Assembly (NCBI RefSeq): GCF_001194135.2
Contig: NC_069000.1
Location: forward strand, 9,361,843 to 9,425,842
Source of the DNA: Octopus bimaculoides
Taxonomy: Eukaryota
Direction: 5' to 3'
DNA: 64,000 nt
The position numbers and the translations under genes were made by a program. How positions within the stretch are numbered: position 1 is the stretch's first letter; each line of letters opens with the position of its first letter. The notes below the pieces were generated by a model. That model was not told the origin of the DNA and ran no database searches. It saw nothing but the letters and a program-made list of their open reading frames with translations. Shown piece by piece: positions 11,298 to 54,447 of the stretch.

Positions 11298-11663
11298 GGT
11301 GGTGGTGGTGATGATAGCAGTGGTAGAGGTGGTGGTGGTGGTGGTGATGTGTTGTTGGAGGNNNNNNNNNNNNNNNNNNNNNNNNNNNNNNNNNNNNNNN
11401 NNNNNNNNNNNNNNNNNNNNNNNNNNNNNNNNNNNNNNNNNNNNNNNNNNNNNNNNNNNNNNNNNNNNCTGAAGAACTAATAATCTCAGTTCCCATAAAT
11501 CTCGAGATGAGGAAGAGGAAGAGAAGGAACATAAGTAGTGATGATGATAAAGCTGTCAATGTTGCTTGGGCTTTGACTTGAGGAACTGGTTCAAGAAGAG
11601 GAGGCAGGAGATATGGAGATTGGAGGGAGTTATGATTTCAGTAATCTTGCTAATCACAGCAGC

Positions 11664-11705
<42 letters not shown>

Positions 11706-11760
11706 TGTTGTAGTAGTAGTGATGGTGGTGGTGGTGGTGGTGGTGGTGGTGGCGATAGTG
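11080..11760. repeat. Compound trinucleotide microsatellite field (GAT)n/(GGT)n/(AGT)n spanning an N-gap
   Basis: Directly visible. Confidence 0.95.
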
Positions 11761-12432
11761 TCGTTTGAAAAGAAATGAAAATGATGTCAAGGGAAACAAT
11801 GACAATGATACGAAGCAAAGGTGACAGCAGCGGAAAGCTAGCATGCTGCTACTGATGCTTACAATAATTTTTATAATTAATGTAGTGCAATGCCATACAA
11901 TTTTCGATTCCCCTCACCACTCCAAGCACCTTTATTTTATTTTATCTTTTAATGACAACATCGGTAACATGACAGGAAGTGAAGGGAAAAGCTTGTAAAG
12001 AAGTATTGGTAATAGGATGAATCATATCCAGACTAATGTCAACATAAACAAACAGCAGCATGAAGGTGTAAGATTTTTACAATTAAGAGCCTGAACTTAA
12101 CATTTTGAAGAGGAATTCAAAACATTGCAAGCAACTGCTAAAATAATAAAAGGTCTATGCAATGGTAACATACTGTTTATTTCATACACAACCTATTTTA
12201 GAGATTTCTGCTAAAAGTGGTACCATAAATTTACTGATGGCTTTGATTTAATTCTCAAATCTTTTCAAATCCATGTTCAAATGGCAAAAATCCATTGATA
12301 AATTTCTAAAAATATAATTTTTTTTTTGCTTTTTTTTTTTTTGCTTTTTACTCTTTCAACTGTTTTGTGACAAGTGTTCATGTAACTATGATGAATGTGT
12401 ATGCAAAGGTATGTGAGTATATATATAGAGAG

Positions 12433-12471
<39 letters not shown>

Positions 12472-13432
12472 GGGTGTTTGATAAAAAATACCTATAATAT
12501 CTTCTAACGAATGTATCAATCAGCATCTTTAGTATGAGCCTTGATTAGCTCGATTGAATTGATATCAAAAGATATATTTGCTTTGAATTAAAAGAAATTG
12601 GACACATGAAAAAAAATATGATGAAAAAAATGTATGTATCACACATTAACTGTAAATGGAAACACACATTTTTATGAGCATATTATCAAATTGAAAAAAT
12701 AATATCTGAAATCAGTTGACAACATTTAATTAAGACAATAAAAAAATATAAATAAAGAGCTGAACTTTAATTATGTCTCTTTAAAAGTTTTAATTTAAGC
12801 TTGAAAATTTTCAATGTACATATTTTTGTTCGCTTTAAAAAAAAAAAGGAAAAAACGGAAAAACTTGATAAAATCAGTTTTTAGTATGTAGACTGAAATT
12901 TTAGCAAAAAAAAAATAATAAAGAAAATCAATAAGCTCTGAGGTTATGCTATTCTTATTAAGGAATTCTAGCTGAGCAAAAGTCATGTTCCCTCTATAAT
13001 ATCACTAAAATATATATTTATCTTGTGTTTTAAACTTACAGAAAAAAAAAACTAATTTAACAAAAGAAGGAATCTTTAAAAAATATCAGCTAATATATAT
13101 GTAAAGTTTCTTCTGTTTTTTGTTGCGCAAACTAAATAATAAGTTCTTAATAATTCCATGATATTTATTATTGCAATAAACAGTGATTCAAATGTAGTAT
13201 TCTTTGAAATGGTATCAATATCTTATAGATAGAAGAATAAAAATGAAGATCTGTATGAGTTGGTAATATTTGCCAATCTTGTTAATGCATAGATAAGTGG
13301 GCACCATTTTCATGTTAAAAATATACAAATGGGTATATTTACCAGTATAATATACAGGTATCAATTTTGTAAACGGTACTTTCTGTTGATGTTATTTGAC
13401 AAAATGACCAGCCCTGTTTCTTGATTTTATAG

Positions 13433-13519
13433 TGACATACATTTGTCATTGACAACTGGAAACATTTTATTGGGCTTGAAAACGGTAAGGAAATGGATGA
13501 AATGCTCAAAATATTACAG
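13433..13519 (+). other. Candidate 87-nt internal exon (phase 2-2)
   Basis: ccctgtttcttgattttatag|...TTACAG|gtaagg; single open frame DIHLSLTTGNILLGLKTVRKWMKCSKYY. Confidence 0.2.
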
Positions 13520-14495
13520 GTAAGGTTGAAATCATTTCACTTTCATCATTCACCAGCATGCTACCAACAAGACAATGAGGACTATGAGTATACCAAGAGT
13601 ATATCAAGAGGCTCACATCTACACAAGAATTTATATAGATTATCTGAGACTGCAGTTTAAATGAACTAATAAAGAGTATGTACAAATGATGAGAATTACC
13701 CAAATTAGAAACAATTTTTTTTGTTTTGTTTTATTACAAGGACAGTTTTGTTTAGTTTTTGAATGATCTGCAAAGACCAAAAGATGCAAAGTAATTGTGT
13801 CTTAGATAAAATATGCTACAAATATAAACCAATATGGTTGTAGGTGAAGATCAATTTTTGTCGGCTTCAAATTTACAGTACATACTTAAACTAACCAGAA
13901 AATTTATAGTATGTACTTCAAATTGACAGCACACACTTAAACGGTCAGAGAATAATTACTATATAAAGGAAAAATGTTAGAAAAAGCAGTTTAGAAAGAT
14001 CTAAAAATAAGAAAGTTATTTGAAAACTAATCAAATTTTAGTCTTCCAATAATTGATTTTACAATATAAATTGAGCTTGTCATTTTAATTTTGGATAAAA
14101 ATGTTTTTACCATTTAGGAAATGAATTATCAAATGAGCTTTTTGAAAGAAGGTCTGTATTTTAGGCTACATAAACAACGAAATCTAGCATAAACAATTAA
14201 AACTGTAAAATCATAAGTAAATATTATAATATGCAATTGAAAATTAAAAATCTAAAAACAAAATAATTCAAAACAAGAAATTAAATTCTGCTGGAAATGC
14301 AAGTTAGAATCTAAATCTAAAAAACAAAGCAGCAAAAGAATTTGAATAAAAATTGAAAGTTAATTTTATTTTTAAATAATACTCTGCAGAAAATGTTTGT
14401 AATATGATGTAAAATTTTCCCCCATGTACAGGTATGGAAAACATTAAAAATAGTTCAATAAAAATCTAAAAGTTAACATAGTCAAGAGCTCTTAC

Positions 14496-14501
14496 TTTAT
14501 T
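14496..14501 (-). terminator. Candidate AATAAA polyadenylation signal for an unspliced form (another at 14365-14370)
   Basis: First minus-strand AATAAA I found downstream of the stop (~610 nt). The motif is common in AT-rich DNA, so this is weak evidence. Confidence 0.2.
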
Positions 14502-15111
14502 TACCCCAACCCTCTCTTTTTAAGTAGATGATTGTGTTCAAGTTGGTGGCATGCTTTAGCCCACAAGTAGGAAAGGGCCAAATGTTTAGAACAATTCCGA
14601 GCATGGACAATGGACTTCTCTGCAGGGTGTCACCAAATATAATGCATCACACACAATTTTACAAGTAAAAAAAATCATTATTTCTCTTTTGAGAAAATAA
14701 CATTTAAAGTTGATGTCTATTGATTATGATAGATAATGTGAAGAATAATTGTCACATACAAAATACTATAATCTTTTTAATAGAAAATACTTAGAACCAA
14801 GATTGTTAGCAATAATTTTGCTAACATCTATTCCAAATGTCCTGCATGTGTGTTCTTCAGTTTGCATACTTAGATGCACTTTTATCTTCAAACTGTATGG
14901 TTCGTAATTTTACGTAAAGAATTCTAGAAGTTTGAGAGTCTTAAAGATCCCCTGCAGCAAGTCCCAATAACAGAATCCAGTGGCAAGGAGTTTGCATGCG
15001 AACATTCAGGCTAATGGTAGTAGTAGTAGAAATGTATGTCTGTCGTAGAAAGCTTTTGAGGAGGGATAACTCCAAATATAGGACACACCAAAATACAAAG
15101 CAGTTAAACAA

Positions 15112-17691
15112 CTACAGCATACCTTCCTCTGTTTGAACTTGGTTTTCTCCATTAGGAAGTGACTGTACATCCTGTGAATGACTTATCACATTGGACTCAT
15201 TGTCCATATCTGCAGACACAGAACTGCTATTTTCAGTTGGAATTGTGGATTTCTGTACAGGTAATTCCTCCTTTGCAACAGTTGGTTGCTGAGAAATTTC
15301 AGAATTATCTTTGACTACAATAGATTCTTTGTCATCATCAGCAACAGGCACTTGTTCAACAGAACCAGAAATGTCTATCTGCTCAGCGCTGCTTGGACCA
15401 TTTTCTGTAGATTTATCATTTTCAGTATTTGCTACCTCATTTTCAGCTGTTACCTCCTCAGTGTGACTGTCACCCTTTCCAGGTGCATTAGCAGTATCTT
15501 GTTCTGAGACTGCTTCTGATGTAATTTCACCTGCTGGTGTTAATTCTGTTGCTATCGTCTCTGCTGCTTCTTTTACTTGTTCAGCTTCATCAGCTGATGC
15601 TTTCTCTTCCACTACATCACTGCTATTATCCACATTTGTTTTGGCTTCTGATGGTGTTGTCTTTTCAATTTCAACTAAAGCTGCCCCTTCTTCTGTATGT
15701 TCAGACTGAGCAGTTTCTTCTACAGCTGGTTGTTTTGTTTCCTCTTGTTTTTCTTCTGATGGAATTTCCTCAACAGTTTCTTTTTCTACTTCCTGTATTT
15801 CCTTTACAGTTTCTTGAGGTTCTAAATGTTCTTCAGCTACTGATTCATGAGGTTCTTCAATAACAGCCTCTTTGGGTTCCTCAACCACAGACTCTCCAGC
15901 CTCTGCCACTTGAGATTCTTCAACTGCAATTTTTTGCTGTTCTGCAGCTTCATGTTGCTTTTGCTCAAATTCCTGCTGAACTTCTTCCAATACTGCTTCT
16001 ACTAAGCTCTCTTCATAAGGTTTTTTAACAGGTTCTTCAACAATAGCAGTTTTCTCTTCAGTATCCACTAAAACTGGGCTTTCTGTTGACTGCACCTCTT
16101 CAGCTACAGATTTAACAGCACTAGCTGCTTCTTCTGTTGGTAGTATTAAGTCCTCTTCATAGGCACCTTTAGGAGAGGGTAATGCTGAAGGTACTTCAGC
16201 TGTCATCAAGTCAGCTGACAAAATATTGTTAGATTCAGTATGTTCACTCTTGAAGATCTCTTCAGTTTTCTCTTCATCTTCCACAACTGGTGGTGGAGGA
16301 GGAGGTAAGCTATCTTCGACTTGATGAGCAGCGTCTTCAATTTCTTGCTTCACAGTATCTACAACGGTGTCTACACTGGTCTCGGTGATGGCTTCAACAA
16401 TGTTTCCACTGTCAACACTAGTTTCTTGGAGTTCAACCTTAGGCATAACCAGCGCATCAACACTAGTTTCAGTAGCATCTGGTTCAACAATTTTGCCACT
16501 ATCTACACTAGTCTCAGCAACATCTATATCCAGGGGAACAGCTGGAACATCAACAGGCTCTTCTTTAGAAACTTTATCTTCAACAAGTTCTTTAACATCA
16601 CTACTATCAACATTAGATGTCAATACAGTAGACGATTCAGATTCTTTATTAGTGGGAAGAAATTTATCAACTAAAGAGGAGGGCATTGACTTAGAAACAG
16701 TTGAAATAATAGTTGATACTTTCTCTTCAACAACAGGAACAACCACTTCTTCAACTTTATCAGCAACTTTAGACACACCTTCTTTTACTTTTTCTGAAGC
16801 AAAGCTTACAATACCGGCATCTTTTGAATCACTTTCAACCTTCTTCACTTCAGTAACTGTTTCTGAAACAGTAGTGATAATTGGCTCAGATTTAATTACT
16901 TTGCTGGACTCCTCAGTGAAATGTTGAACCTCAGTAACCAAATCCTCTTTTGCAGGAACTGAGTCAATTGCTGAGCCAACTGAGTCAGTAAATTTACTAA
17001 CAGACGATGAAACTACAGTTTTATATTCTTGAGTGGAGCTACTGGTAATTTTGCTCACTGATTCAGTTGCACTGGTAGTAAGTTTGGTTACTGATTCTGA
17101 TACATTGTTACTAAGAGTCTTCATGGATTCATTAGTACCAGACACAACTTTACTAACTTGCTCAGAAGCACTGCTTGTAATTTTGCTCACTTCTTTTGTG
17201 ACCATAGTCTTACATTCCTCAGTAACTGATTTCACAACTTCAGATGCAACCTCCATTGCAGTTGCTTTAATATCTTCTGCAACATCTTTCTTGTCAACCA
17301 TAACAAAATCTTCCTCTTTCTTTTCCAAAGTAGATTTAACTTCTTTAGTCACATCTGAGACAGTTGAAGCAGCTTCAGATGTAGCAGATACTGCTTCATC
17401 TTTCTTTTCCTCAATCGCAGCTTCAACTTTAGCAGCTTCTGCACTTACAGCCTCTCCCACATCTGTCACATTTTTCAGTATGTCCAACTCTGTTTTATCT
17501 ATTTGTATATCTGCAGTTCCTTCCTTGCTCACCTCAACACTAACCCCTTGGAGAAGTGGCTCTTGGGCATTTTCCCCAGAAGCTGCAGGACGTTCAAATA
17601 GCACATTTTCTTCATTTTTTTCAACAGGCTTATCTACTAAATTTTCTTCTTCAGCCTCTTTTTTGGCTTGTTTACCCAAAGAACACCCCAT
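15112..17691 (-). CDS. Uncharacterized 859-aa acidic, low-complexity, probably N-myristoylated/palmitoylated scaffold protein; AKAP-like (gravin/AKAP200-type architecture, by motifs only); may be a giant first coding exon
   Basis: Only long ORF in the window. Start context AAAC-ATG-G, with an in-frame TGA 30 nt upstream. N-terminus MGCSLGKQAKK. E/S/T/V/K-rich with no Trp and one Arg. Contains internal 11-mer and ETSVD repeats, AKAP-consensus helices, a LIR and a polyproline motif. The CDS is well supported; the function is inferred. Confidence 0.88.
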   Translation of the reverse strand: MGCSLGKQAKKEAEEENLVDKPVEKNEENVLFERPAASGENAQEPLLQGVSVEVSKEGTADIQIDKTELDILKNVTDVGEAVSAEAAKVEAAIEEKKDEAVSATSEAASTVSDVTKEVKSTLEKKEEDFVMVDKKDVAEDIKATAMEVASEVVKSVTEECKTMVTKEVSKITSSASEQVSKVVSGTNESMKTLSNNVSESVTKLTTSATESVSKITSSSTQEYKTVVSSSVSKFTDSVGSAIDSVPAKEDLVTEVQHFTEESSKVIKSEPIITTVSETVTEVKKVESDSKDAGIVSFASEKVKEGVSKVADKVEEVVVPVVEEKVSTIISTVSKSMPSSLVDKFLPTNKESESSTVLTSNVDSSDVKELVEDKVSKEEPVDVPAVPLDIDVAETSVDSGKIVEPDATETSVDALVMPKVELQETSVDSGNIVEAITETSVDTVVDTVKQEIEDAAHQVEDSLPPPPPPVVEDEEKTEEIFKSEHTESNNILSADLMTAEVPSALPSPKGAYEEDLILPTEEAASAVKSVAEEVQSTESPVLVDTEEKTAIVEEPVKKPYEESLVEAVLEEVQQEFEQKQHEAAEQQKIAVEESQVAEAGESVVEEPKEAVIEEPHESVAEEHLEPQETVKEIQEVEKETVEEIPSEEKQEETKQPAVEETAQSEHTEEGAALVEIEKTTPSEAKTNVDNSSDVVEEKASADEAEQVKEAAETIATELTPAGEITSEAVSEQDTANAPGKGDSHTEEVTAENEVANTENDKSTENGPSSAEQIDISGSVEQVPVADDDKESIVVKDNSEISQQPTVAKEELPVQKSTIPTENSSSVSADMDNESNVISHSQDVQSLPNGENQVQTEEGML
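15117..15126 (-). other. Candidate 5' splice donor GAAG|GTATGC at the end of the big ORF (exon would end at 15123, phase 1)
   Basis: Minus strand reads GAG GAA G|GT ATG CTG TAG; the stop lies three codons into the putative intron. Confidence 0.45.
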
Positions 17692-18149
17692 GTTTCCTAG
17701 CTTACAGTAATTTCTATTTTCTCAGAAAATCTCACAAAAATAAGTTTGTATTTAGCTTCACGTTCTCCTTTACTTTCTTTACTTCTTATTTCTCTTTCAA
17801 AGAAAAAAAACTTACAGATCAACAAATAACTTTGAAGAAACAGAAATACTTCTATTTTTTTCCCTTTCGTTGTAAATTATTAAAGATATAGTGGACTTCG
17901 TTAAAGCATACTTAATTCAACAAAACAACAGTAAATCATTCAAATTACAAAATCCAACAAAAATATGTATGCAAAGTCTTTCAAAGGAGGATATTTGTCA
18001 TGGATAAAGCAAATATTTTCTCAACTGAAATACTAAATCCAAATAGAAGGTACTCCAAGTGTTTAATGTTTCCAATTTAATTCAAAAGTAGAAAATTCCA
18101 GGTTTCTCTTTTAGTTAGGTATTCAATCAAGAGAAAAAAAAGTTGTGTA

Positions 18150-19414
18150 AATCCACGTGAAAGCCACAATTATTGCAACTAATTAACAGAAGCTAAGTGA
18201 GGAAAACCAACTCACCAAAAAAAAGTTGTAGCAAGAATTCTTGAAATGCAAATTGAAAATTTTTTTTTACACAATAATATAAGAAAAAGTATTCTTTTTT
18301 CTCACTTTTTAGCACGTGTGATAATAAAAAATGGCTTATCCAGTACTGCAATTTCTTTTTCTAGTAAAGAATAAATCTCCGAAATGTAAATATGAAATAA
18401 TCCGAGAGTGTAGAATGAAGAAATCAGTCCAAGTTGGTGTTATAAGGTGTGGGCTTTTTGCTTTCTTCAAGAGCCAGCACAAAACATATACTGCTATCTC
18501 CTCGACAATTATTGCAGATAAAATACAAAGGTATATCCCAGCAGAAAAACTGTAATCTTTTTACCAGAATTTGATTTTCATGAAGTCTTAATTAATTGAT
18601 TCCAGGATGCATTTCTAACATCACTGCTATAAGACAAACCTTCTGTCAAATTAAGGAGTTCTGTAGTGTGTGCGCGGCTCTGATATGCAGTCTGTAAGCA
18701 CAGACAAAACCAGGCAATGTAGCTGACTGCTCAGGAGGAAAGCAGAGGGCAGTAGTGGCTGGTTAGAAATCCTAGCTGCCACTCCTAACAATGTATGAAG
18801 ATGGTAGCATAGAGAAAAGTGCTGAGAAGAGAGAAGATTCTTTTCCCATCAGTAAAAGTGAGTTGAGATTAACAGCTATCTAGTCTGAAGGCTAAACTAC
18901 TACTGCTGTTGTGAAGGTAAAAGTTATGGTAGGTGTAGTAATGACAGAACTGGCAGTGTTGCGAGTAGTTCTTATAGTAGTGGCAACAGCTAATGCTGGC
19001 TACTGCTGCTCACTAAAACTAGTAGTAGTAGTAGTAATAGTAGTAGTAGCAGCAACAGCAGCAGCAGCAGCAGCAGTAGCAGTAGTAGTAGTCGTAATAG
19101 TAGTAGTAGTAGTAAGGATAAAAAAGGGAGGAGTATGTCTAAATACACACACACATACAGTACACAAACACACAAACACAAAGAATATCCATCCACCAAC
19201 TGACTAGGTGTCTGCGGCTATGTCAGGGAGAACTGACTGTCTCAGAAAATGGCTATAGTCAGTGAGTGTTATGTTTCCTTTGCAGTTTCCACTTCTTGCT
19301 TGTCTGACAGACTGACTGCCTGTCTAGTTTGATGCCCCTCTCTTCACACATCAATTCCTTTATCCATTCAGTACACCATGGACTTGTACACTACTCAGCA
19401 CCATTCAATCAGAT

Positions 19415-19446
<32 letters not shown>

Positions 19447-19480
19447 ACTCACTCTCTCTCTCTCTCTCTCTCTCTCTCCC
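18150..19480 (-). promoter_or_regulatory. Candidate promoter/5'UTR region of the big ORF
   Basis: CACGTG E-boxes at 18154 and 18313. GC-richer patches at 18660-18790 and 19200-19410. TCAGTY Inr-like motifs on the minus strand at 19198, 19231 and 19310. (CT/GA)n GAGA tract at 19414-19478. No transcript data. Confidence 0.25.
18900..19130. repeat. (AGT)n/(AGC)n microsatellite
   Basis: Directly visible. Confidence 0.9.
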
Positions 19481-22418
19481 TTCTCAAATGTTGTAGAGAA
19501 TTGAATTTCAACCAACAGAAACTATGAGGAGGGAAAAAATATAGGGAGTAAATTGAGAAGAATGGAAGGGAAATAGTAAAGAAAGGGAAATCTAAAGACA
19601 AAAAAAAAAAAGAAAAAAATATCAACTTCCCTATGGAAAAGAATACCAATGAGACTAAGTAGTAACAGAGGGGTGAGAGAGAAAGAGGAAAAAAGTATTT
19701 AAGAGAAGGATATTTTCAAGTAAGAAAGGAAATCAGCCTTCTCACTAACAATAAAAAAAAAAACACCCAAGTGGAAAATGCATTCAAGAGAGGATCACTT
19801 TAAAATCACCCCTCTCTTTTTCTTTATTTCTCTCCCTCTCTCTCTCTCTTTCTTCTTCTCCATCTACATATCTGCCTATCTAACTGCATGTCTCGCACGT
19901 CTATTTTCCTTTTTTATGCTTTTATTTCAGGATATATTTGCTTTATTTTTGTTCTTAATAATTGATTAGAAAGTTGCTCCTGCAATAAGGTAACAATTAT
20001 TAGCTCATTAATTATTTCCCCCCACTTACAGCTCCGAAACCCCACCGCCAGCTACCAACCATTTCCCTCACCACACACACACACATACACACACACACAC
20101 ACACCTACATCTACACCCACTATATAACAGAACATTCATCAGTACACCACCACTCTCTTTGGTTGCTCTATTACTAATGTGACTTGCTCCTGATTTGCAT
20201 CATTATCTCTATGCTACACTAACAACATATTTTGGAAAGGATTTTTGTTTTTAGGTCCTCTTTTTGTAAAATATTGAGTTAACTGAAGAATTCAGGCATT
20301 AAAAATTCCCAAAATTATTTTGGTCTAATTATATTGCTTTGCAAATAATTTTGGTTCAGAGGAGTCACTTTTGGAGGAGTGGAGGGATGGCAGTGTTGGT
20401 GCTTATTTATAGACATCAACTACTTAGATGTGTCCACTTAAATTCTTATATACATACATATACATATATATATATATATATATACAAACATGCATAGCCA
20501 TTTTCTGGCATATATGGCATGCAAAGATGTACATTAATGTATTCTGCTGTATATTATAATGAACAGTAATAATGATGTGGATGAAGAATGAAGGAAGGAA
20601 TAGAAAGATGAAATATAGTTATTTTGTTAATCAACATTTTGAATATTAAATCAAAAGCTATCAATTTATGAATTCTAGAGCAACTATACCACTCCAGTTT
20701 TCAATATCTCTCTATCTCTAGAGAGAAATGGATAATTTGACCACACATACACACGCGCGCGTGTGTGTGTGCGTGCGTGTGTGCGTGTGCACTCTCATAA
20801 ACCATGCTTTATTTAAAAATGTATGTGAGCTACATTTCATACTAGTTATGTATACACATCATTCACATTACACACATAATAAAATAGATACACTACATAC
20901 CGCCACACAATATACATTATGCACCCACCCACTTTGGTTCTATTTTCTAGTTGGAAACCTTTCACTTTTATGTTGTTAATACTTTTGGAAAAGCATGAAT
21001 GCCACAATATCAGACAAACTCAGAGATTATGAAAATATATTCATTTAAGCAACTATGTGTGTATGTAATGTATATTATGTATGTATGCATACAGTATACA
21101 TACAGAGAGAGAGAGAGTGTCAGAGACAGAAAGAATGAATGATATTAGACAGTACAGAAATTTATCATTCACATTTAGTTGATTTAATGCAGGTTATATT
21201 CTAAAATATAGGGCAATATACACATTAAATACAAAGTCATATATTTCATACATGTTAGTCATGGTCATACATAACAGAAACTTTTGTTTCTTTTTTATTT
21301 GCTTTTTTTTTCTTTTCACAAGAGTAGATATACATATGCATACAGATACCTAATAAAATGCATGCATTTTACGTTTGATGTGTAGCAGTTAATATGATTA
21401 AAGCTTTTGGTGGGGGCAAGGAGGAGGGGCATAAAATATTGTTAGTCATAATGGAATGACCATGCTGATTAGTAAAACTGTAAACAGGATTTTCAGAGCC
21501 ATTTACTTGGTATCAGTTAGCATTTATTATGAAGTGACATCTTAAAGCCACTGCTGCTGAGCTTCCAGAAAAGGACAAATAATATAAATGGCAGGTATAG
21601 GAGCAGGGGAAGGGAGAATAGGGTAAGAAGACAGAGCAAGGATGGAAATGAAGGCTGAAAAAGAAGTAAAAAAATAAAGCTGTGATTTGATGAATGAAAT
21701 TAGTGGGAATGAAAAAAAGAAACTGAAGGAATGAATACCAGGTAAGAATTAAAAAGAGAGAGAGAGAAGTAAGTTGGAAAGAAAATTATGATAAATATAA
21801 GGAAAAAAGGCTCCAGATTTAGAAGAAATTGTTGCTTGATTCCTTGAGTCATTTTCACATGACTTCAATTATTTGGGTTTTAAATTGGAACCGAATTTAA
21901 AATTATTTAATTGTATTACGAAGAGAATATTTTAAAAATCTATATATATGTGCATAACTATGAATAAAAGATTACATGTGATGACACAATATAATGATAC
22001 GCACGTGATGATAATTCATGTGTGTAAGGGTTCTTGTAAGGATATGCACATGTGGTTGTGTATTTCGATGAGTGTTTGTATGCTAAAGTGTGTCTCTATA
22101 AGCATTATTATCAAACATGAATGTACAATAAAATAGCTATTTTTCACATTTTATCAAGTATACAGGTGATGGTTGTAAAAAAAGATTCGATAGTTATGCC
22201 AAAGATTGGTCCAGTTGAATTACTTTCAGACTTATCCATCATACATTACAGCCACAGATATATGACAGATATTGCATATAAAATTATGCAACTGAAACAC
22301 ATATATACACATCTTTATATAAATATATACATACATACATGCATACATATTAATGTAATAAAACTCTGAGTAGTAACAGAGAATAATCTCAGCACACCAA
22401 TAAAATACATTAATATTC

Positions 22419-22512: not shown

Positions 22513-22672
22513 NNNNNNNNNNNNNNNNNNNNNNNNNNNNNNNNNNNNNNNNNNNNNNNNNNNNNNNNNNNNNNNNNNNNNNNNNNNNNNNNNNNNNNNN
22601 NNNNNNNNNNNNNNNNNNNNNNNNNNNNNNNNNNNNAATATATACACACACATATATATATACATAAATATG

Positions 22673-27568: not shown

Positions 27569-28001
27569 NNNNNNNNNNNNNNNNNNNNNNNNNNNNNNNN
27601 NNNNNNNNNNNNNNNNNNNNNNNNNNNNNNNNNNNNNNNNNNNNNNNNNNNNNNNNNNNNNNNNNNNNNNNNNNNNNNNNNNNNNNNNNNNNNNNNNNNN
27701 NNNNNNNNNNNNNNNNNNNNNNNNNNNNNNNNNNNNNNNNNNNNNNNNNNNNNNNNNNNNNNAAAACTTTATCATTAGGAATGTACAGCAGTGAAATAGA
27801 TAGTATTAGCAACACGACAACATAAATAAGATTAACACATTTTTCTAAACTCAGATCAATAAAAGAGGTACCGGTAATGTATTGGAACAAGTAAGAGAAT
27901 CTAGTATATAAATTTTAAAGTGGCTTCTCAGAATTAACTTGGGTAACTCAATAACAGCCGTTGTGATTTGAGTTTTTGAAGGAACATATTCTGAATGATG
28001 A

Positions 28002-32600: not shown

Positions 32601-34149
32601 TATATATATATATATATATNNNNNNNNNNNNNNNNNNNNNNNNNNNNNNNNNNNNNNNNNNNNNNNNNNNNNNNNNNNNNNNNNNNNNNNNNNNNNNNNN
32701 NNNNNNNNNNNNNNNNNNNNNNNNNNNNNNNNNNNNNNNNNNNNNNNNNNNNNNNNNNNNNNNNNNNNNNNNNNNNNNNNNNATATATATGTATGATATT
32801 TATCTTCATGCATTGCTCAGCCTATAGGCTCTGTTGTCTCCTAAACTTCAGCCAGGTCTTCTTGTACCTCCCTGCTGACACATCTGGGATATTCCACCAG
32901 GTTAATCAAATGTAGAAAGGTTAAGAAGGTATCTGTATCTGTTCACTGCAATTTGAAGGAAGTTCTTTCTTGTGTATTTACTGCCATGGGAATAGTGCCC
33001 CAACTTATTTTTTCTCTTGATGACAAAAAAACAAAAAACAAAAGGCTATGAGGGAGAAGCTAGGATTTGAAATAGAAACCTTATGGCTTCTAATTAGATG
33101 CTCATCTAGTACATGTAGCTTTTAGTATTAGGGAAGAAATAAAGTAAAGGAAATTTATATGAGTAAAGTTAAAATAAAGTGGTTCTTTAGAATGTAAGAT
33201 AAGCAAATTCAAAATATATGTTCATTCATTATAGACACAGCCATGAGAGAATGAATAACTTCGCTGTGATTTTCTTTCAATGTTGAAACGGAAGTAAAGG
33301 TCAGGCAGGGTTGGAACTAGATGTTCTATGATTAAAAGCATCAATGGTCTCTTTTATAACTAAGAATAGCAAAGTTGTTGTTTCGATTTTTGTTATTACT
33401 ACTAGTGTCTTCTTTTCAAATGGCTCTTCTTCTCTTACAAATGCAAAGCAAAGGAAGAGTCAGATTAAATGAAAAAGACTTTTGTTCTTCATGTAGGATA
33501 TAATGAGAAAAATCTACAGAATGTTTGAAGAACAAAAATACTTTAGTATTTATCAACAGAAGCAATGAAGAAACCATATAGATGGAATTTAATTAATTAA
33601 ACATCCAGCTAGCGAAAACAGTTTAATTGAACCTAAATGTAACTAAAACAACCCTATTTTCTAAGTCACTATTCCTTTTACCTTTCTGACTTGGAATTTT
33701 TTAGTTTATCTTTCTGTTTCACTTCCTTTTGCACTTTTTTTAATGGATATTTTCAAATTTCTTAGCTTTATTATATTTACTTTTGGAGCAAAATATTGTT
33801 TCTTATTACCAAATCAATCAATTGGTCTGGGACTGGTACGTAACCAAAAGTTGGTGGGATGTAACAAAATATTTCAGTTTATTCATAGGATTTCAAATAG
33901 ATACTTAAACCACTCAGCTATCACTATTCCAATATTATGTTATCAGGTGTGACTGATATATAATATATGAGTGAGAATATATTAAGCAACACGGTCATCA
34001 ATCAGCTAACAGTAACAAAGGACCTCAGAATTAATTTAGCAAAAGCCAAAGTCTTAATTAGTAGGAAAGCTGACAAATCACATATCACTTCAGGTAGATG
34101 GCCCTGTTCATACTTTTTCCATGTGTAAAGGCAGGCAAACAGAAATTGC

Positions 34150-36324: not shown

Positions 36325-36446
36325 AGTAGTAGTAGTAGTAGTAATAGTAGTAGTAGTAGTAGTAGTAGTAGNNNNNNNNNNTAGTAGTAGTAGTAGTAGT
36401 AGTAATAGTAGTAGTAGTAGTAGTAGTACTAATAGTAGTAGTAGTA
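36325..36446. repeat. (AGT)n microsatellite with short N-gap
   Basis: Directly visible. Confidence 0.95.
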
Positions 36447-47413: not shown

Positions 47414-47424
47414 NNNNNNNNNNN

Positions 47425-47983: not shown

Positions 47984-48124
47984 ATTCATTATGGGAAGTG
48001 AATAATAAATTTCATATATNNNNNNNNNNNNNNNNNNNNNNNNNNNNNNNNNNNNNNNNNNNNNNNNNNNNNNNNNNNNNNNNNNNATATATATATATAT
48101 ATAAGTAAATGGGTCTTGGTCAGA

Positions 48125-53453: not shown

Positions 53454-54447
53454 GTAAGTAAATGTATGTTTATCTATAATCTGCCTGTAACAATAATTTA
53501 TTCAGAACTAAAAACAAAAGGGAAAAATACTAAGCTAAATATCAAATGTCACTAAAATGGCAATGATGACAAATGCACCTAATGAAATGCATGAATATTG
53601 ATGAAACATTATGGTAAGGAGGATAGCTTATAAAAGCAAAAACATTTAAAAAATCTTGATAAATATATCATGTTCAGATAAATCTAACATTGAAGCTTTC
53701 AAATCTAAACACAATATATTGATTAGCATATGGACTGAACATCAGAATTCAGAGAATATTAACCTTGTTCATTTTACAGATTCACTGTTGCCAGAAGGTA
53801 ATTTTTATACCATTAATATGTCTACCAAATTATACAAGTGACCTGTAAATGAACCTACGTTATCTTTGCTATCTCATAATGGTTAGTCATTTAAGTCACG
53901 AGGGAATTTTAAAAAACTTTTTTTGCCTATCTGTGCAAGTGTACTTCATATTTGAGTGATAAACATTGTTAAATCACATATGTTACAAATTTTACTACAT
54001 TATACCACATTTTAAATTCATTTGTTTCAATAAGTTATATTTCAGAATGGTTTCTTTCACATATGACAACAGATGTTTCAGTGCTTTCCTTCACATTTTG
54101 AAATAGTTGTAAATGTTTAAAAANNNNNNNNNNNNNNNNNNNNNNNNNNNNNNNNNNNNNNNNNNNNNNNNNNNNNNNNNNNNNNNNNNNNNNNNNNNNN
54201 NNNNNNNNNNNNNNNNNNNNNNNNNNNNNNNNNNNNNNNNNNNNNNNNNNNNNNNNNNNNNNNNNNNNNNNNNNNNNNNNNNNNNNNNNNNNNNNNNNNN
54301 NNNNNNNNNNNNNNNNNNNNNNNNNNNNNNNNNNNNNNNNNNNNNNNNNNNNNNNNNNNNNNNNNNNNNNNNNNNNNNNNNNNNNNNNNNNNNNNNNNNN
54401 NNNNNNNNNNNNNNNNNNNNNNNNNNNNNNNNNNNNNNNNNNNNNNN

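What the first reader, a model, noticed from the sequence alone, without database searches (positions are those of the whole stretch)
15112..17691. Candidate membrane-anchored, multivalent PKA scaffold with an autophagy (LIR) motif: a possible cephalopod PKA/lipid selective-autophagy adaptor
Seen: one 2.58-kb exon carries, in order, MGC dual acylation, an acidic EEDFVMV LIR (126-132), a D-AKAP1-like helix (139-159), 7x11-mer amphipathic repeats (167-243), a second 11-mer block (290-334), 4x ETSVD, an acidic LPPPPPP, two more AKAP-consensus helices (520-533, 560-571) and a long acidic tail. Established: gravin/AKAP12 and fly AKAP200 are myristoylated acidic disordered AKAPs; mammalian AKAP11 uses a LIR to send PKA-RI to autophagy; perilipins and synucleins bind curved or lipid-droplet surfaces through 11-mer helices. 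Inference: this protein may combine these modules, tethering PKA to membranes or lipid droplets and linking it to ATG8 and to Ena/VASP actin. I do not know this combination from any characterized protein. Short motifs are permissive and each could be chance.
Basis: partly seen in the sequence, partly recalled or inferred. Interest (0 to 1): 0.8.

Follow-up and report, generated by a model that had tools for sequence, protein, structure and literature searches.

The report
Expanded acylated first exon, octopus Sp17-like gene
The ORF is real, abundantly transcribed and under purifying selection, but it is best read as an octopus-specific, roughly 30-fold expansion of the short myristoylated alternative first exon of the molluscan Sp17-like (RIIa/IQ calmodulin-binding) gene, not as a demonstrated PKA/autophagy adaptor.

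Summary
Every listed feature is at the stated position in an 859-aa ORF (window 15112-17691, minus strand).

**What it is.** The ORF ends three codons past a phase-1 splice donor (GAA G|GTATGC). In O. sinensis RefSeq models this exon joins at "E|TGHDP" to an Sp17 core with 3-6 IQ motifs. The RIIa exon of Argonauta and other molluscs joins at the same point. So do 23-60-aa "MG..." first exons in Haliotis, Ruditapes, Lymnaea and Biomphalaria. The finding is therefore their positional homologue, expanded to 856 aa.

**How it is expressed.** In the octopus RNA runs examined the donor is read through. The result is an unspliced mRNA for a 92-kDa, pI 4.2 protein with an N-terminal acylation signal and mostly predicted disorder. 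Its flanking UTRs are 98-99.7% identical to O. vulgaris, against a background of about 91.5%.

**Tests.**
- dN/dS is 0.29.
- The 11-residue periodicity, the ETSVD repeats and the proline run exceed chance.
- The LIR and AKAP-consensus matches do not (expected 0.47 and 2.6 per shuffled sequence).
- The motifs are no better conserved than their flanks.
- No AKAP, perilipin or synuclein family matches.

PKA and ATG8 binding remain untested. The gene's sibling isoform carries the fold that AKAP helices dock onto, which is a curious lead and nothing more.

The parts
15112..17691 (-). Complete CDS of the 859-aa read-through product (92 kDa, pI 4.18). ATG at 17691-17689 in the context GGAAACATGG, TAG at 15114-15112.
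   Evidence: dN/dS 0.29 against O. vulgaris. In-frame indels only in a divergent relative.
17671..17691 (-). MGCSLGK: N-myristoylation (Gly2) plus palmitoylation (Cys3) signal.
   Evidence: Matches PROSITE G-{EDRKHPFYW}-x(2)-[STAGCN]-{P}. The positionally equivalent first exons in Haliotis, Ruditapes and Lymnaea fit the same pattern. Residues 1-65 have no amino-acid change against O. vulgaris. Acylation itself is inferred.
16660..17496 (-). Residues 66-344: nearly continuous low-confidence helical region, with the highest pLDDT (60-65) at about 90-170.
   Evidence: AF2 single sequence. Omega about 0.50, the least constrained region.
17296..17316 (-). EEDFVMV (126-132): candidate LIR, sitting in the break between two predicted helices.
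   Evidence: Expected 0.47 such matches by chance. Unverified.
16933..17262 (-). Residues 144-253: ten rows of an 11-residue amphipathic repeat with hydrophobic columns 3, 6 and 10 and an S/T-rich polar face.
16690..16824 (-). Residues 290-334: second amphipathic block (KVKEGVSKVAD KVEEVVVPVVE EKVSTIISTVS), carrying the highest hydrophobic moment in the protein.
   Evidence: moment 2.23 at 300-317, lag-11 autocorrelation 0.46. Helix 296-335.
16357..16521 (-). Residues 391-445: four ETSVD-containing repeats with a period of 14-15 residues (30 for the double unit).
   Evidence: Unchanged in O. sinensis. Lies in the most constrained region, 345-560, omega 0.12.
16288..16308 (-). LPPPPPP (462-468) between acidic flanks (codons CCT x3, CCA x3): a candidate proline-recognition (EVH1/profilin/SH3-type) ligand.
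   Evidence: Function inferred only.
15919..16011 (-).
15124..15918 (-). Residues 592-856: acidic disordered tail with E/V/P-rich degenerate repeats. This is where the in-frame length variation between species lies.
   Evidence: Net charge of residues 561-859 is -64.
15115..15123 (-). Phase-1 5' splice site GAA G|GTATGC. The last exon base is 15123 and the intron GT is 15122-15121. When read through it encodes G-M-L-stop.
   Evidence: The O. sinensis isoforms continue ...TEE-E-TGHDP from here. Lymnaea has the same phase and the same 'G|', as does the octopod RIIa exon. The sequence is identical in O. vulgaris.
14264..15111 (-). Proximal 3'UTR of the read-through mRNA, with AATAAA at 14501-14496 and 14370-14365. 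Contigs from four runs end between 14264 and 14413.
   Evidence: Window 14400-15111 is 99.7% identical to O. vulgaris against a background of about 91.5%.
11469..14263 (-). Distal 3'UTR of longer transcript forms. Contigs reach about 13166 and about 12449, and there is an AATAAA at 13169-13164. Conservation decays here from 97% to 95%. The lower bound of this part is an assembly gap.
17692..19049 (-). 5' leader, continuous with the CDS in RNA contigs. A contig break and depth step at about 17,900 suggest a second, proximal start. One uATG in the proximal 227 nt and eight more upstream.
   Evidence: 98.2-98.5% identical to O. vulgaris.
19116..19485 (-). Conserved stretch upstream of the (CTA/CTG)n microsatellite at 19020-19115. 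It is a candidate promoter or distal leader. Elevated conservation stops at about 19,485.
   Evidence: 97.8% identity against 91.3% further upstream.

Best explanation
The ORF is the octopus version of the alternative, N-terminally acylated first coding exon of the molluscan Sp17-like gene. That gene has two mutually exclusive first exons. One encodes the RIIa docking/dimerisation domain. The other encodes an 'MG...' lipid anchor. Both join in phase 1 to a shared exon beginning (E)TGHDP, which is followed by igloo/GAP-43-type IQ calmodulin-binding repeats.

In Octopus the anchor exon has grown from about 23-60 aa to 856 aa, apparently by local duplications: the 11-mers, the ETSVD units and the acidic E/V/P repeats. 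Its splice donor is mostly read through. Translation then stops after Gly-Met-Leu and the RNA ends at poly(A) signals in the former intron. The main product is therefore a stand-alone 859-aa protein.

The inferred mechanism is as follows. Gly2 myristate and Cys3 palmitate tether the protein to the cytoplasmic face of membranes. Residues 66-344 form long, weakly hydrophobic amphipathic helices that can lie on membranes or self-associate. Residues 345-859 form a strongly polyanionic disordered brush carrying short ligand motifs. This design resembles BASP1, GAP-43 and MARCKS. A minority spliced form, known only from O. sinensis models, would in addition hold calmodulin at the membrane through 3-6 IQ motifs.

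Shown here: gene identity, exon homology by position, transcription, read-through, selection, periodicity, and predicted lack of a globular fold. Inferred: acylation, membrane binding, and any partner.
For: **Gene identity.**
- The exon is 94% identical to residues 1-835 of the O. sinensis isoforms, which continue into 3-6 IQ motifs. Pfam IQ gives E=1.7e-34 with 6 stretches.
- The IQ tail finds Argonauta (62% identity) and many molluscan RIIa+IQ proteins.
- The RIIa N-terminus finds vertebrate Sp17 (39% identity over 97% of the query) and insect igloo/neuromodulin-like proteins.

**Same junction.**
- RIIa exons and MG exons of 23, 28, 35 and 60 aa all precede TGHDP.
- Haliotis rufescens isoforms X2 (MG) and X3 (RIIa) share one gene and the same sequence after TGHDP.
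- Lymnaea genomic DNA shows AAT G|GT ... CAG|AA ACT GGA CAT GAC, the same phase as the window's GAA G|GTATGC and the octopod RIIa exon's ACA G|GCAAGT.

**Octopus-restricted body.** An exhaustive phmmer search of 1.84 billion representatives returned only the query.

**Read-through.**
- Depth is flat across the donor, about 75 in X24, about 45 in X29 and about 10 in X23.
- No joint or reportable loose end was seen at the donor.
- Contigs of 3.5-6.6 kb are collinear with the genome.
- O. vulgaris annotates the same GML-ending protein.
- A divergent relative also reads through.

**Function of the unit.**
- dN/dS is 0.29.
- UTR blocks are 97-99.7% identical against a background of about 91.5%.
- Contig depth is 538-672 in two runs.

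**Physical character.**

**Class analogy.** GAP43, MARCKS and BASP1 are fatty-acylated neuronal signalling proteins (PMC6478813). Igloo and GAP-43 are grouped as calpacitins (PMC9618489).
Against: - Homology of the octopus exon to the short MG exons rests on position, splice phase and the shared acylation signal. There is no alignable sequence beyond 'MG'.
- The spliced Myr-IDR-IQ isoforms are RefSeq models that I could not verify with reads. In organism A, 10 of 99 reads at the donor fit only partly, so a few per cent of spliced transcripts cannot be excluded.
- The octopus RIIa exon was not linked to this locus. It is not in the window, and the one octopod RIIa exon found (L001) is of unknown species.
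- No poly(A)-tailed reads were seen at the proposed 3' ends.
- Unlike GAP-43, MARCKS and BASP1, there is no basic effector domain, only KQAKK.
- Tissue and subcellular location are unknown.
- Acylation was not tested.
Confidence: 0.65

Rival explanations
1. First reader's model. The protein is a membrane- or lipid-droplet-anchored multivalent AKAP that binds PKA RI/RII through helices at 139-159, 520-533 and 560-571, and delivers them to ATG8 through the EEDFVMV LIR.
For: - The motifs exist.
- Residues 139-159 and 561-591 are predicted helical, and the LIR sits in a helix break.
- All are unchanged between the window species and O. sinensis except A530V.
- Acylated acidic AKAPs exist, such as gravin/AKAP12 and AKAP200 (from my own knowledge).
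Against: - Matches are at chance frequency for this composition: LIR expected 0.47, AKAP regex 4 observed against 2.6 expected.
- The motifs are no better conserved than their flanks.
- The 66-344 region has the highest omega, 0.50.
- Residues 520-533 are not helical in AF2.
- Residues 139-159 are simply the first two rows of the 11-mer array.
- No AKAP family or PDB AKAP peptide matches.
- Nothing here bears on lipid droplets.
Confidence: 0.05
2. Intra-locus docking pair. One or more amphipathic helices of the expanded exon bind the RIIa (R2D2) four-helix bundle of the sibling Sp17-like isoform, or an Sp17-ROPN1L heterodimer, rather than PKA itself. This would tether ciliary or flagellar-type D/D proteins and calmodulin-loaded IQ tails to membranes.
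For: - The exon alternates with an RIIa exon in the same gene family.
- SPA17 D/D domains do bind AKAP helices: 9.6 uM as a homodimer and 82 nM with ROPN1L (PMC8339350).
- Candidate helices exist.
Against: - The chance-level and conservation arguments are the same as for the AKAP model.
- Co-expression of the two isoforms is unknown.
- The RIIa exon was not located in this window or linked to it.
- This is association only.
Confidence: 0.06
3. The biologically relevant protein is the spliced Myr-IDR-Sp17core-IQn isoform, a giant igloo/GAP-43-like membrane calmodulin store. On this view the abundant read-through RNA is mainly a regulatory or by-product transcript (premature polyadenylation) whose 859-aa product matters little.
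For: - The O. sinensis RefSeq models X2-X5 all use the donor.
- The donor is perfectly conserved and sits exactly at the ORF end.
- Other molluscs use the equivalent exon only as a spliced leader.
Against: - No spliced reads were detected at depths of about 75 and about 45.
- The 712 nt downstream of the stop are 99.7% conserved, and longer UTR forms are conserved too, as expected for a functional mRNA.
- O. vulgaris annotates the short protein.
- The tissues sampled are unknown, so a tissue-specific switch remains possible.
Confidence: 0.15
4. The ORF is not a functional protein-coding sequence. It would be a chance ORF, a TE relic, or a long non-coding RNA with an incidental ORF.
For: - No Pfam domain.
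- No homologue outside Octopus.
- Biased composition that also opens antisense ORFs.
Against: - It is an 859-codon ORF in AT-rich DNA, and the only long ORF in 64 kb.
- dN/dS is 0.29 with P about 2e-6.
- All ten indels are in frame while a UTR indel is not.
- The start context and acylation signal are conserved.
- There are no TE domains, and reads do not map to a second place within the CDS stretch.
Confidence: 0.01

Closest known systems
Short 'MG...' first-exon isoforms of the molluscan Sp17-like RIIa/IQ gene: Haliotis rufescens isoform X2 (MGGKLSRLADIVNKRRKSDSTTE|TGHDP), Ruditapes, Lymnaea, Biomphalaria. These are uncharacterised RefSeq or genome models.
   Same: The first coding exon starts with a myristoylation-type MG signal. 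It ends in phase 1 with G, joins the same (E)TGHDP exon and replaces the RIIa exon.
   Different: Those exons are 23-60 aa. The octopus exon is 836-857 aa, acidic, repeat-rich and mostly not spliced, and it gives a stand-alone protein without IQ motifs. No residue-level similarity exists beyond the N-terminal signal.
Sp17/SPA17 (sperm autoantigenic protein 17), the prototype R2D2 docking/dimerisation protein
   Same: It is the same gene family as the exons downstream of this one in O. sinensis: an Sp17 core TGHDP..DRxYN plus IQ. Argonauta and other molluscs have the RIIa N-terminus, and the vertebrate Sp17 hit is 39% identical over 97% of the query. Background is in PMC8339350.
   Different: The product encoded in the window has neither the RIIa domain nor an IQ motif. 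It substitutes for the RIIa exon. Molluscan versions carry 5-10 IQ repeats. Vertebrate Sp17 has one, as seen in P0132.
Calpacitins: Drosophila igloo, vertebrate GAP-43/neuromodulin, and arthropod 'neuromodulin-like' proteins (for example the mite protein MGCTAST... with 3 IQ motifs)
   Same: The spliced octopus isoforms would combine N-terminal acylation, disorder and IQ motifs of the AATKIQA(S/G)FRGH type. The IQ repeat unit (E-E-x-DIDL-x-DPE...KIQ) is shared with igloo. The family grouping is in PMC9618489.
   Different: Igloo and GAP-43 are small (about 150-240 aa) and always carry the IQ motif. The dominant octopus product lacks it and is 859 aa. Homology concerns the downstream exons, not the exon in the window.
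BASP1/CAP-23 and MARCKS (acylated, acidic, natively unfolded membrane proteins)
   Same: This is a likeness of design, not of descent: an N-terminal lipid anchor on a long acidic disordered chain, expressed at high level (PMC6478813).
   Different: There is no sequence homology, no polybasic effector domain, and the protein is much larger. It has an 11-mer amphipathic region that, to my knowledge, those proteins lack.
Gravin/AKAP12, Drosophila AKAP200, AKAP11
   Same: Acylated or acidic disordered scaffolds. Short amphipathic helices fitting the permissive RII-binding regex are present.
   Different: No family-level similarity. Motifs are at chance frequency and not preferentially conserved. 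Binding is untested.
Perilipin, alpha-synuclein and apolipoprotein 11-mer amphipathic repeats
   Same: An 11/3-type periodicity with a narrow hydrophobic stripe and an S/T-rich polar face. 'KVKEGV' at 301-306 recalls the synuclein KTKEGV unit (from memory).
   Different: No Pfam match to the perilipin, synuclein, apolipoprotein or LEA families at E<=10. The resemblance is one of convergent architecture at most. Lipid-droplet or curved-membrane binding is untested.

Membership tests
AKAP (A-kinase anchoring protein) | A 14-18-residue amphipathic helix that binds the RI/RII D/D dimer | tested here: inconclusive
   Four regex matches (145, 522, 560, 706) against 2.6 expected in shuffles, P=0.27. 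AF2 predicts helices for 134-215, 561-591 and 703-716 but not 520-533. Binding cannot be tested with these tools.
AKAP (A-kinase anchoring protein) | Sequence relationship to a known AKAP family or to AKAP peptides of solved D/D complexes | tested here: not met
   No AKAP Pfam family at E<=10. Nothing in the exhaustive phmmer search. No PDB AKAP peptide hit for three candidate segments at E<=10.
AKAP (A-kinase anchoring protein) | Anchoring helices conserved above background among orthologues | tested here: not met
   Substitutions are 3.6% inside and outside the motifs. Omega is 0.22 against 0.33, P=0.43. The test has low power, as the orthologues are about 96% identical.
LIR-type selective-autophagy receptor (AKAP11-like) | An acidic-flanked [W/F/Y]xx[L/I/V] motif in an accessible segment | tested here: inconclusive
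   EDFVMV at 127-132 fits the xLIR regex and lies in a helix break. About 0.47 such matches are expected by chance, with P of at least one = 0.39.
LIR-type selective-autophagy receptor (AKAP11-like) | Direct ATG8/LC3/GABARAP binding | not testable with these tools
   This requires a pulldown or a multimer model.
Perilipin / synuclein / exchangeable apolipoprotein 11-mer proteins | Tandem 11-residue amphipathic repeats | tested here: met
   Lag-11 hydrophobic autocorrelation is 0.62, P=0.018. There are ten rows with columns 3, 6 and 10 hydrophobic at 0.9, 0.8 and 0.7.
Perilipin / synuclein / exchangeable apolipoprotein 11-mer proteins | Match to the family profile | tested here: not met
   None of these families appears in Pfam at E<=10.
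Sp17/SPA17-like RIIa-IQ gene (gene membership of the exon) | The exon is spliced to the Sp17 core (TGHDP...DRxYN) and IQ exons at the junction used by the RIIa exon | tested here: met
   The O. sinensis isoforms do this. Argonauta, Haliotis, Liolophura and Crassostrea RIIa exons use the same junction. The phase-1 G| donor is shared with Lymnaea and the octopod RIIa exon. It was not seen in organism A reads.
Sp17/SPA17-like RIIa-IQ gene (protein membership of the 859-aa product) | RIIa (PF02197) domain and IQ motif present in the protein | tested here: not met
   The ORF has no Pfam hit. There are no RIIa or IQ exons in the window. The product is not an Sp17 protein, although it is encoded by the Sp17-like locus.
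Calpacitin (GAP-43 / igloo type) | N-terminal acylation signal | tested here: met
   MGCSLGK fits the myristoylation pattern, with Cys3 adjacent. This is the motif only.
Calpacitin (GAP-43 / igloo type) | IQ calmodulin-binding motif in the same polypeptide | tested here: not met
   It is absent from the 859-aa read-through product that dominates the RNA. It is present only in the modelled O. sinensis spliced isoforms.
GAP-43/MARCKS/BASP1 functional class (acylated acidic IDPs) | Lipid anchor, natively unfolded acidic chain and basic effector domain | tested here: inconclusive
   The anchor motif and predicted disorder are met. No polybasic effector domain is present, only KQAKK at 7-11.

The most novel reading that the evidence does not exclude
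One locus encodes both halves of an anchoring pair. The ancestral Sp17-like gene makes an RIIa (D/D) isoform, and in Octopus its alternative lipid-anchored first exon has expanded into an 850-aa scaffold. Amphipathic helices of that scaffold (for example 134-165 and 561-591) would dock the D/D bundle of the sibling isoform, of ROPN1L-Sp17 heterodimers, or of PKA-RII. Intronic polyadenylation would then release this scaffold as a separate, abundant protein. On this reading an AKAP-like anchor was born from the leader exon of a D/D-domain gene.
Probability: 0.06. Interest if true: 0.8.

Novelty: new variant of a known kind. Interest (0 to 1): 0.45.

Why it matters
The finding shows how a new, abundant protein can arise inside an old gene. 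A 20-60-residue lipid-anchor leader exon grew about 30-fold through internal repeats. It then became a stand-alone coding unit by read-through of its own splice donor, with UTRs now more conserved than the coding sequence.

It also links three literatures that are usually treated separately. In molluscs a single gene carries an Sp17-type RIIa docking exon, a myristoylated alternative exon, and igloo/GAP-43-type IQ repeats. I found no paper describing this arrangement or this octopus protein.

For cephalopod biology it flags a highly expressed, lineage-restricted, membrane-tethered polyanionic protein whose tissue and partners are unknown.

For the scan, it is a caution. LIR and AKAP consensus strings occur at chance frequency in V/A/E-rich disordered proteins.

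Tried and rejected
- Pfam and PDB searches of the whole ORF found nothing.
- My first idea, on seeing the IQ tail, was a plain GAP-43/igloo orthologue. I revised it when the tail's homologues turned out to carry RIIa, making them Sp17-like. Igloo similarity is confined to the IQ repeats.
- I looked for the IQ and RIIa exons inside the window by tblastn and found neither.
- Genomic loci for the O. sinensis isoforms and the Haliotis MG isoform are not on record. The Argonauta gene, at about 270 kb, is too long for its DNA to be served.
- An exhaustive phmmer search for squid, cuttlefish or Nautilus orthologues of the exon returned only the query.
- Runs of organisms B and C hold nothing at 80% likeness or above.
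- I looked for poly(A) tails at the 3' end and none were reported.
- TRF does not detect the protein repeats at the DNA level because they are too diverged.
- Rfam and tRNA scans of the window found nothing.
- No A-to-G editing signal was seen in the CDS at the thresholds used.
- A literature search by accession number gave no hits.

Full report
**1. The observation**

The window holds one long ORF, at 15112..17691 on the minus strand, 859 aa. It is the only ORF above 225 aa in the 64 kb, apart from its own antisense shadows and an N-run artefact.

The protein is 17.7% Glu, 13.6% Val and 12.0% Ser. It has 202 acidic and 73 basic residues, a mass of 92 kDa and a pI of 4.18. The ATG has a good context (GGAAACATGG) and an in-frame stop lies nine codons upstream.

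**2. Which features exceed chance**

Shuffling the sequence gives the following:
- An extended LIR match is expected 0.47 times per sequence, and one was observed (P of at least one = 0.39).
- The permissive RII-binding regex is expected 2.6 times, and four matches were observed (P=0.27). I wrote that regex from memory of the published consensus.

The 11-residue periodicity, in contrast, is real:
- Hydrophobic autocorrelation is 0.62 at lag 11.
- Identity at lag 11 beats the best of lags 2-30 in only 1.8% of shuffles.
- Stacked in register, ten rows (144-253) have hydrophobic residues in columns 3, 6 and 10 at 0.9, 0.8 and 0.7 and at 0.3 or less elsewhere.

Its hydrophobic face is somewhat broader than in the later rows.

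AF2 without an alignment gives mean pLDDT 41 and pTM 0.26, so no globular fold. It predicts:
- low-confidence helices at 66-127, 134-215, 220-242, 250-287 and 296-344, a short one at 363-375, and isolated helices at 430-459, 561-591 and 703-716;
- a break at 128-133, where FVMV lies;
- no helix at 520-533.

**3. Transcription**

Eighteen runs of 'organism A' hold all sampled words of the ORF. Contigs of 3.5-6.6 kb are collinear with the genome from about 19,049 down to 14,413-14,264, and in two high-depth runs (538 and 672) down to about 13,166 and about 12,449. At 19,049 a (CTA/CTG)n microsatellite breaks the assemblies. No splice joint lies inside the region.

The ORF ends ...ACA GAG GAA G|GT ATG CTG TAG. 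Read depth does not fall across that GT, staying at about 75 in X24, about 45 in X29 and about 10 in X23. No loose end of 3 or more reads is reported there. In X24, 10 of 99 reads fit only partly, so a few per cent of spliced molecules cannot be excluded.

Depth then drops about ten-fold between 14,470 and 14,380, near AATAAA signals at 14,501-14,496 and 14,370-14,365. No poly(A)-tailed reads were reported.

**4. Gene context**

The only sequence relatives of the ORF are Octopus proteins:
- an 838-aa O. vulgaris 'hypothetical protein' that also ends in GML;
- O. sinensis RefSeq models X2-X5, which carry misleading automatic names such as 'golgin subfamily B member 1'.

An exhaustive phmmer search of 1.84 billion representatives returned only the query.

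The O. sinensis models follow the exon to ...QVQTEE and then continue E-TGHDPVTTSAALTDRQYN... with 3-6 IQ motifs (Pfam IQ E=1.7e-34). Searching with that tail found Argonauta hians (62% identity) and many gastropod, bivalve and chiton proteins with an N-terminal RIIa domain (PF02197) followed by TGHDP and 5-10 IQ repeats. The RIIa N-terminus in turn finds vertebrate 'sperm surface protein Sp17' (39% identity over 97% of the query) and insect igloo/'neuromodulin-like' proteins through the IQ repeats. The downstream exons therefore belong to the molluscan Sp17-like gene.

SPA17 is the prototype R2D2 docking/dimerisation protein. It binds AKAP18 at 9.6 uM as a homodimer and at 82 nM as a heterodimer with ROPN1L (PMC8339350).

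**5. A conserved alternative first exon**

Several molluscan isoforms lack RIIa. They begin instead with a short exon that joins at the same point:
- Haliotis: MGGKLSRLADIVNKRRKSDSTTE|TGHDP, 23 aa. H. rufescens X2 pairs with the RIIa isoform X3 of the same gene.
- Ruditapes: MGNNFSLFQGCTSKKKNSGKSTPPTVEE|TGHDP, 28 aa.
- Lymnaea: 35 aa.
- Biomphalaria: 60 aa.

The Haliotis, Ruditapes and Lymnaea exons fit the PROSITE myristoylation pattern, as does the octopus MGCSLGK. The Biomphalaria exon starts with MG but does not fit the pattern.

In Lymnaea genomic DNA the exon ends AAT G|GTTGGT and the acceptor reads CAG|AA ACT GGA CAT GAC. This is phase 1, with the split codon giving Glu, exactly like the window's GAA G|GTATGC. 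An octopod RIIa exon recovered from a Logan assembly ends ACA G|GCAAGT, also phase 1.

The octopus exon is therefore the positional homologue of this lipid-anchor leader exon, enlarged from 23-60 aa to 836-857 aa. That the ORF closes three codons after the donor is what read-through of a former intron would produce.

Neither the RIIa exon nor the IQ exons lie in the window. The Argonauta gene spans about 270 kb, so this is unsurprising.

**6. Selection**

- Against the O. vulgaris locus, Nei-Gojobori dN/dS over 838 codons is 0.287 (31 synonymous and 32 non-synonymous changes, P=1.7e-6).
- Against a more divergent relative present in a metatranscriptome (X28), dN/dS is 0.29 for residues 469-859 (P=2e-4).
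- In X28 all ten indels within the CDS are multiples of three, while a 2-nt indel lies just upstream of the ATG.

| Region (residues) | Result |
|---|---|
| 1-65 | no amino-acid change |
| 66-344 | omega 0.50 |
| 345-560 | omega 0.12 |
| 561-856 | omega 0.40 |
| Everything else | omega 0.33 |

The motif against non-motif difference is not significant (Fisher P=0.43). Amino-acid substitutions against O. sinensis are 3.6% both inside and outside the motifs. The caveat is that these species are only about 4% apart.

The non-coding parts of the transcript are more conserved than the CDS:

| Block (window coordinates) | Identity to O. vulgaris |
|---|---|
| 19,485-19,116 | 97.8% |
| 19,019-17,919 | 98.5% |
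| 17,918-17,692 | 98.2% |
| CDS | 96.3% |
| 15,111-14,400 | 99.7% |
| 14,399-13,166 | 97.2% |
| 13,165-11,469 | 95.2% |
| Flanks on both sides | 91.3-92.2% |

The donor, the GML stop and the next 40 nt are identical. This argues that the unspliced, read-through mRNA is a selected unit and not splicing noise.

**7. What it most likely is and does**

*Shown:*
- The exon is an acylation-signal-bearing alternative first exon of the Sp17-like RIIa/IQ locus.
- It is hugely expanded in Octopus by internal repeats: 11-mers, ETSVD units with a period of 14-15 residues, and acidic E/V/P units that vary in length between species.
- It is expressed mainly as a stand-alone mRNA.
- It is under purifying selection.
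- It is predicted to be helical-amphipathic at 66-344 and disordered and polyanionic thereafter.

*Inferred:*
- Gly2 myristoylation and Cys3 palmitoylation tether it to membranes.
- The weakly hydrophobic, S/T-rich 11/3 helices lie on membranes or self-associate.
- The acidic tail, with the most constrained segment at 345-560 (ETSVD repeats and LPPPPPP), presents ligand sites.

The design is closest to the acylated acidic neuronal proteins BASP1, GAP-43 and MARCKS (PMC6478813), but there is no basic effector domain. The spliced isoforms modelled in O. sinensis would add a calmodulin store of the igloo/GAP-43 'calpacitin' kind (PMC9618489).

**8. The AKAP/LIR hypothesis**

Nothing here excludes binding, and two candidate helices are plausible amphipathic helices. 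However:
- the matches are at chance frequency;
- they are not preferentially conserved;
- one of the three is not predicted helical;
- one is part of the 11-mer array;
- no AKAP family or solved AKAP peptide resembles them.

There is one new and intriguing circumstance. The exon alternates with an exon that encodes the very fold AKAP helices dock onto. That is association, not evidence. I give the resulting 'intra-locus anchoring pair' idea about 6%.

**9. Novelty**

I found no paper on these accessions or on this arrangement. I rate the finding a new variant of a known kind: a lineage-specific expansion and partial emancipation of a conserved lipid-anchor leader exon. It is of moderate interest, mainly as a case of new-protein origin and as a link between the Sp17, igloo and GAP-43 families in molluscs.

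Noticed in passing
window 14400-15111, 17692-19485 and 11469-14399: The non-coding parts of the transcript are more conserved between this species and O. vulgaris (97-99.7%) than the CDS (96.3%), and far more than the flanks (about 91.5%). The 712 nt after the stop differ at only about 2 positions. The cause is unknown. It could be a regulatory 3'UTR, control of the choice between splicing and polyadenylation, or RNA structure.
   Followed up: partly
P0009/P0011 (Haliotis), P0036, P0072 (L002 10001-10103 and 15235...), P0080, P0138, P0073: Across molluscs one gene alternates an Sp17-type RIIa first exon with a short first exon starting MG. A mite 'neuromodulin-like' protein starts MGCTAST and an amphioxus IQ protein starts MCGCTSS. 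The IQ repeat unit (EE-x-DIDL-x-DPE..KIQAGF[KR]G) is shared with insect igloo. This hints that protostome igloo/GAP-43-like proteins and Sp17 share ancestry at one locus.
   Followed up: partly
window 19020-19115: A (CTA/CTG)n trinucleotide microsatellite (read on the gene strand) lies in the 5' leader. It attracts enormous multi-mapping RNA depth (up to about 1.5e5 word depth) and breaks all transcript assemblies at 19,049.
   Followed up: no
runs X25-X27 ('insect metagenome') and X28 ('invertebrate metagenome'), laid on window 15060-17720: Metatranscriptomes labelled insect or invertebrate hold 37-80% of the exon's words. X28 is a diverged octopus-like sequence, sharing six of the listed amino-acid changes with O. 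vulgaris/sinensis. The X25 contig carries an in-frame length variant in the acidic tail (skips 69 nt, inserts 12). This is probably prey, contamination or mislabelling.
   Followed up: partly
window 16367-16927 (+) and 17033-17710 (+): There are antisense ORFs of 186 and 225 aa opposite the CDS. They are by-products of the GAA/GTT/TCT-rich codon usage and not independent genes. The unstranded coverage gives no sign of separate antisense transcripts.
   Followed up: no
window 15044, 14971 and 16816: Polymorphisms between individuals: C/T at 15044 (about 40% of reads in X24) and at 14971 (X23 and the X15 contig) in the 3'UTR, and 16816 G>A, which is synonymous (Ala292 GCC>GCT). No A-to-G (T>C on the + strand) editing-type differences were seen in the CDS at the thresholds used.
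   Followed up: partly
window 11362-11468, 22513-22636, 27569-27762, 32620-32782, 36372-36381, 47414-47424, 48020-48086, 54124-54447: There are eight assembly gaps (N runs). The one at 54124-54447 is followed by (AT)n and (TG)n microsatellites and creates a spurious 156-aa 'ORF'. The gap at 11362-11468 limits where the conserved 3' block can be said to end.
   Followed up: no
The cause presumably lies in 19400-21500 and may be a simple repeat or a contaminant-like segment. I did not examine it.
   Followed up: no
L001 537-690 (Logan assembly of run ERR3431203): An octopod RIIa exon, 90% identical to Argonauta, uses a GC-AG type donor (ACAG|GCAAGT). It was called as a 129-aa protein by reading into its intron. 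The species is not shown, and its linkage to the window locus is not established.
   Followed up: partly
window residues 301-306 (about 16774-16791): 'KVKEGV' at the start of the second amphipathic block resembles the alpha-synuclein KTKEGV repeat core (from memory). There is no Pfam synuclein match, so this is probably convergence.
   Followed up: no
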